The position numbers and the translations under genes were made by a program. Under the pieces are notes generated by a model. It saw only the letters and a program-made list of their open reading frames with translations, was not told the DNA's origin and made no database searches. Below, piece after piece: positions 5,928-54,731 of a stretch of 64,000 bases of DNA. Position 1 is the first letter of the stretch. Each line of letters opens with the position of its first letter. The stretch covers positions 62,001 through 126,000 of the IMG/VR virus record IMGVR_UViG_3300042560_001323. One strand, written 5' to 3'.

Positions 5928-8225
5928 TTATTTTCCGGGGCAATCTACGACGTTAATGACCTTTTCACGGTTCACTGGCACAATAGTTAGGTTATCACCA
6001 ACTCTCTCTACACAGAGCCGTGCAATAAGATTTACCCTATAGCCAGTTTGAGACTGAATATAGATTTTTGGCATTTCTGTAAATCCTTCACCTTTTGTAA
6101 GAACATCAATTTTTATGATGGCTCCATTAGGACTTATTGTTGCTCTTGCGGTTGCTCCATTTGGAGGCTCAATAATAACTTGATCGCTTTGCGAGTAGCC
6201 AAATCCACTTTCTCTAATAATAACGTCACAGAGTTTTAGAATGACTGGGTATTGGCCATTTGATTTGGATGGATAGATTGCAGTTGGGGGTTTAACTGGA
6301 TCAGTCAAGGTTCTACCATCTCCACCTAAACTTCCATCTGGTGCAGAAAGATAACCGGAGCCCATATCTGTTATAACTACTTTAGTTACTCCAGTTGTAG
6401 TTGTTCCATTTGTTCCGGTTGCATTTGTTCCGGTTGTAGTTGTTCCATTTGTTCCGGTTGTAGTAGTGGAGGTGGTTCCAGAAATTTGAGCATTGACCAC
6501 ACCAATAATAGCAGTAGCAACCGCACCAGAACCTTTACCGCAAGCATCATAAAACTTTATTAGAGGAGAAGATGTATAACCCCCACCTGGATTTGTTATG
6601 TCAATTCCGATAACCTGACCCAATGCACTAACAATTGCATTACCGGCTGCACCGGTTCCACCTCCACCAGAGAATTGAATAGTTGGGGGACCACAAGAAA
6701 TAGCACCCACATTACAGGTATCTTGAAATGCATCACTAAAATCTAAATCAAAGTTAAAATTATCGGGGTCAACAGACTGTTGGACATTTGTAGCAAATGA
6801 CTTCATTTTACTAATCAATCCCGAAATATCCGTGATATCTCCCGCAATAGATTCTGGTCCGTCCCATATACTCCATTCTTTTATCTTTGCACAGGATGGT
6901 TCTTCATCACAAGAAATACCCGAAAGAAGATCGCTAACAAACCCGAGAATATCTGAAACAACATCAAATATACCGAAAACTGCCTTCAACGGAGCAAGAA
7001 TTAAATCAATTGCACCGGTAAGGAGACCTGTAATTTTACCAATAAGAGCCCCGACAAAGTTTTCAACCGCGCACAGTGGAGTATTGATAAGATAATCCAC
7101 TGCGGATGCAAGAAACTTTGCAACCATTTTAATAAGATTTTTGATTATCTTCCTGAACAAACAGGCCAATAAATCATTTGCTTTTTCAACCTTATCTATT
7201 GCCTTCTGGAGTTCACTTGGAAATAGAGTATAATATACATTCTTAAGTTTATCGTTAATTTGATTAATTATAAACTGTTGTATTTGTGTGATTAGGGTTT
7301 TCAGAGGAACAGAAATAAATTTTGAGACCTCTTGAATTTTTACCTTAAGATATTCATCAATGCTATATTGTTTTCCTTCTTTATTTTGATATGTATCAAT
7401 TGAATTAGTAAATCCAGATGAGAATACTTCATTTAAAGTTGTGCTAACCCCGATAGGAGAGTTAAAAGAGCCAAGTGCATTAAAAGGAATAAATGCTGCT
7501 GAATATGCTCCACTCGCAATGGTGCTAATACCAGATGAATTAATATTGAAATTTTGAAGAGTCGTTGATCCTATTTCAATAGAAGGGCTCTGACCAATAC
7601 TGGCAAGACTATTTTTTTGATTGGCAAACCACAATTTTGCATCAGTTATTTCTCTGATGAACTTCTTTAAACTGCTCTGAATTGCCCCGAGTGGCACTTT
7701 TTCACAGGTTGTTGGCGCCTCAAGAAATGTCGTAAAAACTCCATCTTGAAGTTCAAAATAGTTGGCAACATTTTCGTAGAACATTGCATTAGCCGAAGAC
7801 TCAATGAATCCTTTCTTTGGCGAAATATTATAAACTGGTGGTTGTTCTTTGCCGTTAAAGGCACTAAATGGAGTAAACCCTACGGCAGACGTTCCAAATA
7901 ATGTTTGTTCATTAGTGCCAAGACAGCCAGTAATAAAGTATCTTTCTCCAATTTGTGAGACCCAGACGAATGAACCCTCGGTCAAATTTGCAGTTTGATA
8001 ATTAGCCCTATGGCCAGTTCCTGCGGTTACAGGATACATTACTTCCAACCAAGGAAGATTTATATCAGGAAGAATTGACTTATTTTCAGAATGAATACCT
8101 TGGATTCTTACGGGATACCTTTTACCCCATCCTTTATTTGCTCCAGGTTTCCATTTTCCAGATGCGGAATTGCTTTTCCAAAAATCAGGTGGTATTTGGC
8201 CAATAAAGAAGTTATTATTTCCCAT
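5928..8225 (-). CDS. Baseplate hub subunit gp5-like
   Basis: N-terminal OB-fold signature RYPVRIQGIH...LPWLEVMYPVTAG; Gly-rich GxGY repeats; Thr/Gly low-complexity tract near 6380-6480. Confidence 0.85.
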   Translation of the reverse strand: MGNNNFFIGQIPPDFWKSNSASGKWKPGANKGWGKRYPVRIQGIHSENKSILPDINLPWLEVMYPVTAGTGHRANYQTANLTEGSFVWVSQIGERYFITGCLGTNEQTLFGTSAVGFTPFSAFNGKEQPPVYNISPKKGFIESSANAMFYENVANYFELQDGVFTTFLEAPTTCEKVPLGAIQSSLKKFIREITDAKLWFANQKNSLASIGQSPSIEIGSTTLQNFNINSSGISTIASGAYSAAFIPFNALGSFNSPIGVSTTLNEVFSSGFTNSIDTYQNKEGKQYSIDEYLKVKIQEVSKFISVPLKTLITQIQQFIINQINDKLKNVYYTLFPSELQKAIDKVEKANDLLACLFRKIIKNLIKMVAKFLASAVDYLINTPLCAVENFVGALIGKITGLLTGAIDLILAPLKAVFGIFDVVSDILGFVSDLLSGISCDEEPSCAKIKEWSIWDGPESIAGDITDISGLISKMKSFATNVQQSVDPDNFNFDLDFSDAFQDTCNVGAISCGPPTIQFSGGGGTGAAGNAIVSALGQVIGIDITNPGGGYTSSPLIKFYDACGKGSGAVATAIIGVVNAQISGTTSTTTTGTNGTTTTGTNATGTNGTTTTGVTKVVITDMGSGYLSAPDGSLGGDGRTLTDPVKPPTAIYPSKSNGQYPVILKLCDVIIRESGFGYSQSDQVIIEPPNGATARATISPNGAIIKIDVLTKGEGFTEMPKIYIQSQTGYRVNLIARLCVERVGDNLTIVPVNREKVINVVDCPGK

Positions 8226-53894: not shown

Positions 53895-54048
<154 letters not shown>

Positions 54049-54119
54049 TTAATGAAATTAAGTTTTTGTGCCTTTTAGAGCATTTCAAGAATTTGAGTTG
54101 TAGAAACAGTCATTTTAGT

Positions 54120-54260
54120 TTACCTCTTGGCAATTACACCAAATAAAAATCCAGAAATCCATTTAGTAGCACCAGAAGGTTCTGGAACTACCAGTAAAAC
54201 CATAGCAACAATTATAAGTGCGGCTATAACCACTTTAACTGTTTTCTCCTCGTTGGTCAT
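54120..54260 (-). CDS. Small membrane peptide (46 aa)
   Basis: Manual translation MTNEEKTVKVVIAALIIVAMVLLVVPEPSGATKWISGFLFGVIAKR. Confidence 0.5.
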   Translation of the reverse strand: MTNEEKTVKVVIAALIIVAMVLLVVPEPSGATKWISGFLFGVIAKR

Positions 54261-54311
54261 AAAAATACATCCACAATTAAAACATCAATTAGAATGAAAT
54301 TGGTCATTCAA

Positions 54312-54594
54312 CACCCCGTGAGGGCTACGATCCCCCGATCTACTGCTTAGCGTACCACTATGGTTTTCACCACCACCACATTTAGTGTTTGTGGTCTGGA
54401 CCATCCCTTCACCATATTTCTTAAGAACTTAGGTGCTTCCCGTCTGGTCTCTACACGTTCAAGATTTCTCTTGCTTCGCTCGGGATTGCCATTTTAAAGG
54501 TTTCCCCGAATTTGAGAAGTTACATTCATAGAGTTTCCCCTATGGCGCTCCATCAGTTTAAGGCAGTTGCTTTATCCGGCTAAGCTAACGGGGC
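54312..54594 (-). tRNA. trnR: tRNA-Arg(UCU) interrupted by a group I intron
   Basis: Exons 54594-54560 and 54350-54312 splice to ACTGC-CTTCTAA-GCAGT; acceptor GCCCCGT/ACGGGGT. Confidence 0.88.
54351..54559 (-). mobile_element. Group I intron, 209 nt, no ORF
   Basis: Follows a U, ends in G; core P AAATTCGGGGAAA, Q AATCCCGAGC, R GTAGAGACCA, S AAGGGATGGTCC (P7 GACCA/TGGTC). Confidence 0.88.
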
Positions 54595-54632
54595 AAAAAA
54601 TTCCTTCAATAAGAAGAGAATTATTCAACTAC

Positions 54633-54639
54633 TATTTAG
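54633..54639 (-). promoter_or_regulatory. Late promoter CTAAATA upstream of tRNA-Arg
   Basis: Motif match about 40 nt 5' of the tRNA. Confidence 0.5.
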
Positions 54640-54731
54640 AAGTTTTATGGATAGGAATGTGATTGATTTCTCAACCACCCCTTAAGAATAACACAAAACC
54701 ACCAGAACGGTGAGAGCGTGTGCCAGTTTGA

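What the first reader, a model, noticed from the sequence alone, without database searches (positions are those of the whole stretch)
54312..54594. Phage tRNA-Arg(UCU) split by a group I intron at position 34/35
Seen: 209-nt ORF-less intron with a complete P/Q/R/S core between U34 and C35; the spliced loop is CU-UCU-AA; the T loop is atypical (AUCGUAG). Known: the cyanobacterial tRNA-Leu(UAA) intron occupies the same position, while described bacterial tRNA-Arg introns are in the CCU isoacceptor and most phage group I introns sit in protein genes. Inference: intron transposed between tRNA species or captured from the host; it could hide the anticodon loop until splicing.
Basis: partly seen in the sequence, partly recalled or inferred. 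Interest (0 to 1): 0.7.

Follow-up and report, generated by a model that had tools for sequence, protein, structure and literature searches.

The report
Self-splicing intron in phage tRNA-Arg
A large lake-water phage related to cyanophages carries its AGA-reading arginine tRNA gene split by a small self-splicing (group I) intron. It belongs to a large family of such introns in phage and bacterial tRNA genes that I could not find described in the literature.

Summary
On the minus strand, 54594-54312 encodes a tRNA-Arg(UCU) split between U34 and C35 by a 209-nt ORF-less group I intron (Rfam 55.2 bits; ARAGORN calls it only in intron mode).

Across 54 related introns, comparison supports the assigned splice sites. 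The exon end C32-U33-U34 always pairs with the guide GAG, and the last intron base is always G. The base 5' of GAG is G where the 3' exon starts with C (Arg) and U where it starts with A (Leu). 31 of 44 predicted helix pairs show compensatory changes.

The closest related phage contig has the same tRNA at the same site without the intron. It differs mainly in the anticodon arm. This points to DNA-level gain from another intron-bearing tRNA-Arg(UCU) allele, not capture from the host.

This copy is not unique. The same intron at the same site occurs in at least 39 distinct viral tRNA-Arg(UCU) genes and in 44 bacterial genomes from five phyla. Some copies carry an I-Ssp6803I-type homing endonuclease. 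Close relatives sit in viral tRNA-Leu(UAA) genes.

The papers I could search describe none of this. A 2014 review states that all phage introns lie in protein genes. No RNA data cover this phage, so splicing is inferred.

The parts
54560..54594 (-). 5' exon of tRNA-Arg(UCU): acceptor 5' strand, D arm, anticodon stem 5' strand ACUGC, then C32 U33 U34. The last three bases form P1 with the intron guide.
   Evidence: ARAGORN with introns and on the spliced sequence. Sequence read. CUU/GAG pairing holds in 54 of 54 relatives.
54351..54559 (-). 209-nt ORF-less group I intron (IC3-like, Azoarcus/Anabaena type).
   Evidence: Rfam RF00028 at 55.2 bits, above the gathering score of 50. RNAalifold gives 44 pairs, 31 with compensatory changes. 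Fold z-score is -2.72. No ORF on this strand.
54548..54551 (-). GGAG. GAG is the internal guide pairing with C32-U33-U34 (U34.G wobble at the 5' splice site). The preceding G pairs with C35, the first base of the 3' exon (one-pair P10).
   Evidence: P1 holds in 54/54. The base 5' of GAG is G in 28/28 introns whose 3' exon starts with C, and U in 26/26 whose 3' exon starts with A. Coordinates.
54527..54544 (-). P2 hairpin CAUAGGG-GAAA-CUCUAUG with a GAAA tetraloop (L2).
   Evidence: (five pairs predicted here, 13-26 sequences each with both sides changed).
54514..54519 (-). P3 5' strand CUUCUC. It pairs with GGGAAG at 54436-54441 (pseudoknot with P7).
   Evidence: 46-54 of 54 sequences paired at each of six positions, with several pair types. 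Coordinates.
54480..54509 (-). P4-P5 domain: UCGGGG ... CC/GG ... UCCCGA, which includes the old 'P' and 'Q' elements.
   Evidence: columns 76-81/115-120 and 85-86/110-111. centroid fold.
54455..54479 (-). P6 (GCG/CGU) with the P6a hairpin CAAGAGAAAUCUUG.
   Evidence: columns 121-123/161-163 and 127-129/156-158, with compensatory changes..
54445..54449 (-). P7 5' strand GACCA (the 'R' region, where the guanosine-binding helix lies). It pairs with UGGUC at 54399-54403 ('S').
   Evidence: five pairs, three of them with changes on both sides (GACUA/UAGUC, GACUU/AAGUC, GAGCA/UGCUC in relatives)..
54410..54435 (-). P8, carrying the CCUAAG...UAUGG motif. By sequence this is an 11-nt GAAA-tetraloop receptor.
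   Evidence: (columns 184-187/210-213). The receptor assignment rests on general knowledge of IC3 introns and was not tested.
54354..54395 (-). P9 domain: ACCAC/GUGGU stem enclosing the hairpins CACUAAAUGUG and UGGU-GAAA-ACCA.
   Evidence: columns 228-232/275-279 nearly invariant; 260-264/269-273 with 13-36 sequences changed on both sides..
54351..54351 (-). Terminal G of the intron (omega G) at the 3' splice site.
   Evidence: G in 54 of 54 aligned introns.
54312..54350 (-). 3' exon: C35 U36 A37 A38, anticodon stem 3' strand GCAGU, variable loop AGAUC, T arm GGGGG-AUCGUAG-CCCUC, acceptor 3' strand, discriminator G73. No CCA is encoded.
   Evidence: The T arm is identical in the intron-less orthologue L008:5581-5654.

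Best explanation
This is a real, probably splicing-competent, ORF-less group I intron of the small IC3 type found in bacterial tRNA genes. It sits between U34 and C35 of the phage's only tRNA-Arg(UCU) gene.

Inferred mechanism, from the family's known chemistry:
- In the precursor the two exon halves pair as the anticodon stem.
- C32-U33-U34 pairs with the intron guide GAG, giving a three-pair P1 with a U34.G wobble.
- An external guanosine bound in P7 attacks after U34.
- The terminal G then takes the binding site. C35 is held by the G just 5' of the guide.
- The exons are joined, giving a tRNA with loop CU-UCU-AA that reads AGA, the phage's commonest arginine codon.

Origin. This lineage gained the intron at the DNA level by recombination or endonuclease-driven homing from another intron-bearing tRNA-Arg(UCU) allele, most likely in another phage. 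The donor's anticodon arm came with it. This copy has no endonuclease gene, so it is a passenger that persists because it splices.

Shown: anatomy, boundaries, covariation, the empty site in a relative, and the family's distribution. Inferred: splicing itself and the route of gain.
For: Identity and boundaries:
- Rfam group I hit above the gathering score.
- ARAGORN finds tRNA-Arg(tct) only when the 209 nt are removed.

Across 54 related introns:
- P1 holds in 54/54 and the terminal G in 54/54.
- The first P10 pair covaries perfectly with tRNA type: G with C in 28/28, U with A in 26/26.
- 31 of 44 RNAalifold pairs have compensatory changes. P3 and P7 both covary.

The tRNA is in use:
- AGA makes up 41% of Arg codons in 150 long ORFs.
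- The odd T arm is kept unchanged and the D stem shows a compensatory U13-A22 versus C13-G22 change against the intron-less orthologue.

Empty site:
- L008 (neighbouring protein 92% identical, same flanks) has the uninterrupted tRNA.
- 9 of the 14 differences in 74 nt fall within nt 26-43.

Nearest relatives:
- The nearest intron is viral tRNA-Arg(UCU) L132/L021: 85% identity, sister at 99/94 support.
- Intron-bearing Arg(UCU) alleles found by the exon-independent scan share the same kind of anticodon arm.

Mobility of the family:
- Long members encode PF11645 PD-(D/E)XK endonucleases (E 1e-32 to 1e-43; PDB 2OST family). Other members keep decayed remnants of that gene.
Against: - No RNA evidence. 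The RNA runs that share words with the region hold only conserved cores of other introns, not this phage.
- P10 is a single pair here and P1 only three pairs, so splicing may depend on the anticodon stem or on protein help.
- The donor was not identified. The closest intron is only 85% identical.
- The phage genome has no PF11645 homologue, so homing would need an endonuclease supplied in trans, or plain recombination.
- The constant G39-C40 among most Arg(UCU) examples was partly imposed by my search pattern.
- Selection on the anticodon stem after insertion, rather than co-conversion, cannot be excluded.
Confidence: 0.75

Rival explanations
1. Direct jump within this phage lineage from a tRNA-Leu(UAA) intron into tRNA-Arg(UCU). 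The route would be reverse splicing or illegitimate recombination, possible because both loops begin C32-U33-U34.
For: - Viral Leu(UAA) introns are 79-83% identical to this one and share its starred 44-row clade.
- P1 (CUU/GAG) is the same in both, and one guide base separates the two types.
- The first bases of this intron (AAA) resemble the Leu 3' exon.
Against: - The phage genome has no tRNA-Leu gene. ARAGORN with introns finds only Ile, Asp and Arg.
- The nearest intron is already in an Arg(UCU) gene and already has GGAG.
- The whole anticodon arm changed with the gain, which fits DNA exchange with an Arg allele.
- The AU test does not reject a single origin of all Arg(UCU) introns (p 0.117).
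Confidence: 0.1
2. Captured from the bacterial host: the host's own tRNA-Arg(UCU) gene carries the intron, and the phage copied the intron with its anticodon arm, or the whole gene.
For: - The same intron at the same site exists in at least 44 bacterial genomes of five phyla.
- Phage tRNA genes are often of host origin (general knowledge).
Against: - Acceptor, D and T arms match the related phage L008, not the bacterial genes.
- Bacterial Arg(UCU) introns mostly form a separate clade (100/99) from this one.
- The phage looks like a distant cyanomyovirus. In 401 cyanobacterial genomes the best match is 76% identical and none is in Arg(UCU).
- The host is unknown, and the BLAST sample covers only part of the phylum.
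Confidence: 0.08
3. Dead intron in a dead gene: the insertion inactivated the tRNA and neither is used any more.
For: - No transcript data exist.
- The T loop is unusual and the first acceptor pair is G1.U72.
- There is no endonuclease gene.
Against: - All core helices, the guide, the terminal G and the tetraloop motifs are intact, and none departs from the family consensus.
- The unusual T arm is shared with the intron-less orthologue, and the D stem changed in a compensatory way.
- AGA is the main Arg codon.
Confidence: 0.07
4. The intron is kept for a use of its own. It might gate the supply of the AGA-reading tRNA during infection. It might also shield the gene or precursor from anticodon-directed nucleases or from a competitor's endonuclease.
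For: - Only indirect: tRNA introns recur in many phage contigs.
- The phage's sole tRNA-Arg(UCU) depends on splicing.
Against: - Intron-less alleles persist in close relatives, L008 here and S-SZBM1 for the L147 group. That is the patchy pattern expected of a selfish element.
- The mature tRNA would be as exposed as any other.
- No test was possible.
Confidence: 0.05

Closest known systems
[quoted passage not shown] 1990 and Kuhsel et al. 1990, as cited in PMC3984707)
   Same: - Same insertion point (U34|N35).
- Same three-pair P1 (C32-U33-U34 with GAG).
- Same IC3-like core.
- The exons pair as the anticodon stem.
- Cyanobacterial Leu(UAA) introns fall in the same large clade as this intron.
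   Different: - The host gene is tRNA-Arg(UCU), so the 3' exon starts with C, not A.
- The base 5' of the guide is G, not U.
- It is carried by a phage.
- Best identity to any of 401 cyanobacterial genomes is 76%, over the core only.
tRNA-Arg(CCU) group I intron of Agrobacterium and cyanobacteria, and the Azoarcus tRNA-Ile(CAU) intron (Reinhold-Hurek and Shub 1992, from memory)
   Same: - Small ORF-less IC3 ribozyme in a tRNA anticodon loop.
- GAAA loops in L2 and L9, and a CCUAAG...UAUGG motif in P8.
- Three-base exon recognition.
   Different: - In the CCU genes read here the intron follows U36, not U34, and the guide differs.
- The isoacceptor differs.
- The cyanobacterial CCU introns form their own clade (100/99).
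Synechocystis tRNA-fMet intron with the homing endonuclease I-Ssp6803I (Bonocora and Shub 2001, cited in PMC3984707; PDB 2OST)
   Same: ORF-bearing members of the Arg(UCU) intron family encode the same PD-(D/E)XK family (PF11645). They match 2OST.
   Different: - This copy has no ORF, and the phage genome has no homologue.
- The host tRNA and the insertion point differ.
Phage group I introns in protein genes (T4 td, nrdB and nrdD; Twort; psbA of cyanophage S-PM2)
   Same: Phage-borne self-splicing group I introns that spread by homing. This genome also has two further group I introns, one next to a psbA fragment.
   Different: Those interrupt protein-coding genes. The 2014 review says that was true of all phage introns known then. 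This one interrupts a tRNA and belongs to the tRNA-intron lineage.
Microcoleus phage My-WqHQDG (GenBank OR578706.1), annotated 286-nt 'tRNA-Arg'
   Same: A deposited phage record whose tRNA-Arg gene holds a 213-nt group I-like intron. It was the only such annotated case I met.
   Different: It is tRNA-Arg(CCU) with the intron after U36, and it groups with the cyanobacterial CCU introns. I found no paper describing it.

Membership tests
Group I intron (Rfam RF00028) | Conserved core of paired regions P3-P8 recognised by the family model above its curated score | tested here: met
   55.2 bits against a gathering score of 50, E 2.7e-11, full model length 1-253. Found again in the whole-genome search.
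Group I intron (Rfam RF00028) | 5' splice site after a U that forms a U.G wobble with the internal guide (P1) | tested here: met
   U34 pairs with the first G of GAG. C32-G, U33-A and U34.G hold in 54 of 54 aligned relatives.
Group I intron (Rfam RF00028) | Intron ends in G (omega G) | tested here: met
   G at 54351, and G in 54 of 54 relatives.
Group I intron (Rfam RF00028) | P3/P7 pseudoknot, with P7 as the guanosine-binding helix | tested here: met
   Both helices can form and both covary: P7 (three of its five pairs changed on both sides), P3. The binding site itself was not tested.
Group I intron (Rfam RF00028) | Self-splicing by two transesterifications started by external guanosine | not testable with these tools
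   No RNA run holds this phage. Needs an in vitro assay.
Bacterial tRNA anticodon-loop introns (subgroup IC3) | Sits in the anticodon loop, and its removal yields a valid tRNA | tested here: met
   ARAGORN calls tRNA-Arg(tct) on the spliced sequence. The anticodon stem is made from both exons and covaries strongly across relatives.
Bacterial tRNA anticodon-loop introns (subgroup IC3) | Small core with GAAA tetraloops in L2 and L9 and a CCUAAG...UAUGG receptor in P8 | tested here: met
   All three motifs are present at 54534-54537, 54365-54368 and 54410-54435. Their tertiary contacts are assumed from the Azoarcus structure, not tested.
Bacterial tRNA anticodon-loop introns (subgroup IC3) | Groups by sequence with reference tRNA introns | tested here: met
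   Cyanobacterial Leu(UAA), fMet and Arg(CCU) introns fall in the same 80-row clade (100/99) as this intron. No formal subgroup classifier was run.
Mobile group I intron with its own homing endonuclease (I-Ssp6803I type) | An endonuclease ORF inside the intron | tested here: not met
   No ORF on the intron strand. No PF11645 homologue anywhere in the 243-kb genome. Relatives of 597-668 nt do carry one.
tRNA-Arg (bacterial type) | Cloverleaf with anticodon UCU, short variable loop, A20 and purine 73 | tested here: met
   (cloverleaf, tct). A20 in the D loop AGCCGGAUA and G73 are read from the sequence. Their role as Arg identity elements is general knowledge. Charging was not tested.
tRNA-Arg (bacterial type) | Canonical T loop (U54 U55 C56 R57 A58) | tested here: not met
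   The loop is A54 U55 C56 G57 U58 A59 G60. The same loop occurs in the intron-less orthologue, which still scores 57.3 bits as a tRNA.

The most novel reading that the evidence does not exclude
Phage tRNA genes host one retargetable ribozyme lineage. The same core moves among anticodon loops by changing only a three-base guide and one to three neighbouring bases. Observed sites in viral contigs are Leu UAA, Arg UCU, Ala UGC, Thr UGU and a UCA reader after U34, and Thr UGU, Lys UUU and Arg UCU after U36. Some phages may keep it for a use of its own: timing or protecting the supply of a rare-codon tRNA, or excluding competitors' alleles during co-infection. The first half is fairly well supported. 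The probability given is for the adaptive second half.
Probability: 0.12. Interest if true: 0.8.

Novelty: new variant of a known kind. Interest (0 to 1): 0.6.

Why it matters
A standard review states that all known phage group I introns lie in protein genes, even though phages carry many tRNA genes. The main tRNA finder, tRNAscan-SE, is not built to see group I introns. These genes are therefore easily missed in annotation.

Three consequences follow:
- Phage tRNA genes are a common home for self-splicing introns. This includes a tRNA-Arg(UCU) site for which I found no description.
- The same Arg(UCU) intron sits in cultured bacteria such as Vibrio, Lysinibacillus and Fibrisoma. Their genomes may therefore appear to lack this tRNA.
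- The family offers a natural series in which a tiny change in the guide sequence goes with a change of target tRNA. That is directly testable. It bears on how ribozymes change targets and on intron traffic between phages, cyanobacteria and other bacteria.

Tried and rejected
- **Direct evidence of splicing.** Two run searches and two read layings. The DNA runs hold the phage, but no RNA run does. The RNA runs match only the conserved cores of other introns. No intron-less variant appeared in the contigs of four lake metagenomes, but contigs drop rare variants.
- **Exact 21-mer of the P7 region in viral contigs.** No match.
- **Near-identical phages in GenBank.** None. A distant blastn search found only core matches: a 735-kb uncultured phage, where the intron lies in tRNA-Leu(UAA), and introns in protein genes.
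- **Endonuclease next to the tRNA or elsewhere in the genome.** None by Pfam, PHROGs or tblastn.
- **Repeated Leu/Arg switching.** The free trees need at least five changes on well-supported branches. However, the AU test does not reject a single clade of all Arg(UCU) introns (p 0.117). I therefore do not claim a number or a direction of switches.
- **My first loose boundary finder.** It gave many false positives. I replaced it with a check that ARAGORN recognises the spliced product with the junction exactly after position 34.
- **Conservation of G39-C40 in Arg(UCU) hosts.** Not used as evidence, because the search pattern required it.
- **Literature.** Eight searches and nine papers read in part. 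None describes a phage tRNA group I intron or a tRNA-Arg(UCU) group I intron. The library lacks most subscription journals, so this is not proof of absence.

Full report
**What is there.** The feature lies on the minus strand. Read 5' to 3', positions 54594-54560 give the first 35 nt of a tRNA: acceptor strand, D arm, anticodon-stem strand ACUGC, then C32 U33 U34. Positions 54559-54351 are 209 nt that begin AAACUGAUGGAG and end GUGGUACG. Positions 54350-54312 continue with C35 U36 A37 A38, GCAGU, a 5-nt variable loop, the T arm, the acceptor strand and G73.

Default ARAGORN does not see the gene. With introns allowed, it calls tRNA-Arg(tct) with a 209-nt intron after U34. It calls the same tRNA on the spliced sequence. 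Rfam's group I model matches 54570-54376(-) over its full length at 55.2 bits (gathering score 50, E 2.7e-11). No ORF of 40 aa or more lies on the intron strand.

**The genome.** The window is part of a 243,166-bp virus record with direct terminal repeats, from lake-water metagenomes.
- It has only three tRNA genes: Ile(UAU), Asp(GUC) and this one.
- A tail protein has homologues almost only in Synechococcus and Prochlorococcus myoviruses, at 38% identity or less. The phage is therefore a distant relative of cyanomyoviruses. Its host is unknown.
- AGA is its commonest arginine codon: 41% of Arg codons in 150 long ORFs. A tRNA reading AGA is plausibly useful to it.

**Is the intron likely to work?** I collected relatives in two ways.
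- A scan of viral contigs for a core motif of this intron, independent of the exons.
- A scan for the 3' end of the intron joined to the Arg 3' exon.

I kept only cases in which ARAGORN recognises the spliced product with the junction exactly after position 34. That left 39 distinct viral and 44 bacterial tRNA-Arg(UCU) genes, 35 viral tRNA-Leu(UAA) genes and a few others.

In an alignment of 54 short members (A1):
- RNAalifold recovers the anticodon stem and P2, P4, P5, P6, P7, P8 and the P9 domain. 31 of 44 pairs show compensatory changes.
- P3, which forms a pseudoknot with P7, pairs in 46-54 of 54 sequences at each position, with several pair types.
- C32-U33-U34 pairs with GAG in 54 of 54, and the last intron base is G in 54 of 54.
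- The base just 5' of GAG is G in all 28 introns whose 3' exon begins with C (27 Arg, one UCA reader). It is U in all 26 whose 3' exon begins with A (Leu).

That last covariation, between an intron base and the first exon base after the splice site, is what a working P10 contact predicts. It fixes the 3' junction at G|C35. In this copy every element matches the family consensus. The single sequence also folds better than shuffles (z -2.72). Splicing itself is still an inference. The RNA runs that share words with the region hold only conserved cores of other introns.

**How it got there.** The closest related contig is L008, whose neighbouring protein is 92% identical. It has an uninterrupted tRNA-Arg(UCU) at the same place, with the same flanks, the same rRNA-like element and the same tRNA-Asp downstream.

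The two tRNAs differ at 14 of 74 positions. Nine of those lie in nt 26-43, the anticodon arm, which reads A-ACUGC-CU...AA-GCAGU here and G-GAAGU-UU...AA-ACUUU in L008. The acceptor stem apart from position 72, and the whole unusual T arm, are identical. The D stem differs by one compensatory pair.

The arm found here is the kind carried by other intron-bearing viral Arg(UCU) genes. These include those found by the exon-independent scan. The nearest intron, L132/L021, is in a viral tRNA-Arg(UCU). It is 85% identical and sister to this one at 99/94 support.

The simplest reading is DNA-level replacement of the anticodon arm together with the intron, by exchange with an intron-bearing Arg(UCU) allele. 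That is the co-conversion pattern expected of homing. Members of the family 597-668 nt long encode a PD-(D/E)XK endonuclease of the I-Ssp6803I family (PF11645, E 1e-32 to 1e-43; PDB 2OST). One of them is viral. Other members carry decayed remnants. This copy has none, and the phage genome has no homologue. The enzyme would therefore have acted in trans, or ordinary recombination during co-infection did the job.

**Relation to tRNA-Leu introns and to the host.** Viral tRNA-Leu(UAA) introns are 79-83% identical to this one. In IQ-TREE trees they mix with the viral Arg(UCU) introns in one well-supported clade. Most bacterial Arg(UCU) introns form a separate clade (100/99).

The free tree needs at least five changes of host tRNA on well-supported branches. 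However, the AU test does not reject a single clade of all Arg(UCU) introns (p 0.117). The number and direction of switches stay open.

Cyanobacterial Leu(UAA), fMet and Arg(CCU) introns fall in the same large clade as the viral ones. Among 401 cyanobacterial genomes, though, the best match to this intron is 76% identical over the core. None lies in tRNA-Arg(UCU). Host capture is therefore not supported, with the caveat that the host is unknown.

**How it compares with what is known.** The ribozyme works like the classic tRNA-Leu(UAA) intron: same position, same three-pair P1, exons held by the anticodon stem. It looks like the small Azoarcus-type IC3 introns: GAAA loops in L2 and L9, and CCUAAG...UAUGG in P8.

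It differs in three ways:
- The host gene is Arg(UCU), not Leu(UAA), Ile(CAU), fMet or Arg(CCU).
- The guide base that meets the 3' exon is different.
- It sits in a phage.

The 2014 review of bacterial group I introns says all phage introns seen to date are in protein-coding genes despite many phage tRNA genes. The tRNAscan-SE 2.0 paper says the program is not designed to detect group I introns. Eight literature searches found no description of a phage tRNA group I intron or of an Arg(UCU) one. The one annotated case I met is a 286-nt 'tRNA-Arg' in Microcoleus phage My-WqHQDG. That is an Arg(CCU) gene with the intron after U36.

**Verdict.** It is one ordinary member of a family that is large in the data but that I could not find in the literature. 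This lowers the rarity of this single locus and raises the interest of the class. I rate it a new variant of a known kind: a known ribozyme type and mechanism, in a new target tRNA and in phages. Intron-less alleles in close relatives (L008 here; S-SZBM1 for another subgroup) fit a selfish element that comes and goes.

Noticed in passing
window 53995-54041 (minus strand); also L008 around 6668-6725: A 47-nt stretch matches bacterial 23S rRNA model positions 1098-1144. This is the L11-binding, GTPase-associated hairpin GGUUGGCUUAGAAGCAGCC (24.3 bits, E 1.5e-5). It lies between tRNA-Arg and tRNA-Asp and is kept with two changes in the related phage L008. In the metagenomes it attracts depth from many unrelated contigs. 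Its function is unknown. It might be a protein-binding decoy or a leftover of rRNA-gene exchange.
   Followed up: partly
L001 1501-1737 (genome C1:227320-227556, minus strand) and L001 1718-1909: A second group I intron (66.2 bits) lies directly after a 63-aa frame matching only the N-terminal part of photosystem II D1 (psbA). The PHROG E-value is 3e-17, but Pfam is below cut-off. No downstream psbA exon was found anywhere in the genome. It looks like a psbA 5' fragment carried along with an intron.
   Followed up: partly
L003 1501-1737 (genome C1:21275-21511, minus strand): A third group I intron (54.8 bits) lies between two ORFs of 174 and 227 aa that match no Pfam or PHROG family. The host gene is unidentified.
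   Followed up: partly
window 54312-54350 and L008 5581-5654: The tRNA has A54 and U58 where nearly all tRNAs have U54 and A58. In the window copy the first acceptor pair is G1.U72. Both phages keep the same T arm. All other intron-bearing Arg(UCU) genes seen have the usual GGUUCGA-type loop.
   Followed up: partly
window 54067-54385 and 54540-54681, as seen in run X4: An 18.7-kb contig of a related phage (about 95% identical in the flanks) keeps a diverged copy of the intron core (54386-54539, with 14 differences and 12 gaps). It has 816 and 588 other letters in place of the two sides. The relative may therefore have a different intron copy, another host tRNA or an insertion there. The contig sequence could not be read.
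   Followed up: no
L051, L072, L112, L034, L068, L087/L130 (viral contigs): Other members of the same intron family sit in other tRNAs, each with a matching guide.
- After U36: Thr(UGU) with guide GCA, Lys(UUU) with GGA, Arg(UCU) with GGG.
- After U34: Ala(UGC) and Thr(UGU), with C 5' of GAG pairing G35.
- Also after U34: a tRNA with anticodon UCA.
   Followed up: partly
L316, L319, L342, L329, L268, L348, L286 (bacterial genome loci): Cultured bacteria carry the Arg(UCU) intron: Vibrio floridensis, Enterovibrio nigricans, Lysinibacillus odysseyi, Cytobacillus gottheilii, Fibrisoma limi, Marinomonas lutimaris and Alkalicoccobacillus gibsonii. Standard tRNA annotation probably misses these genes. 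I did not check the records' annotation.
   Followed up: no
L386 413-698 (GenBank OR578706.1 84823-85108): Microcoleus phage My-WqHQDG has an annotated 286-nt 'tRNA-Arg'. It is a tRNA-Arg(CCU) with a 213-nt group I-like intron after U36. A PD-(D/E)XK nuclease gene lies just upstream.
   Followed up: partly
L004 343-633 (GenBank LR756501.1, 735-kb uncultured phage): This very large phage has a tRNA-Leu(UAA) with a 205-nt group I intron (56.6 bits) at position 34/35. The record carries no annotation.
   Followed up: partly
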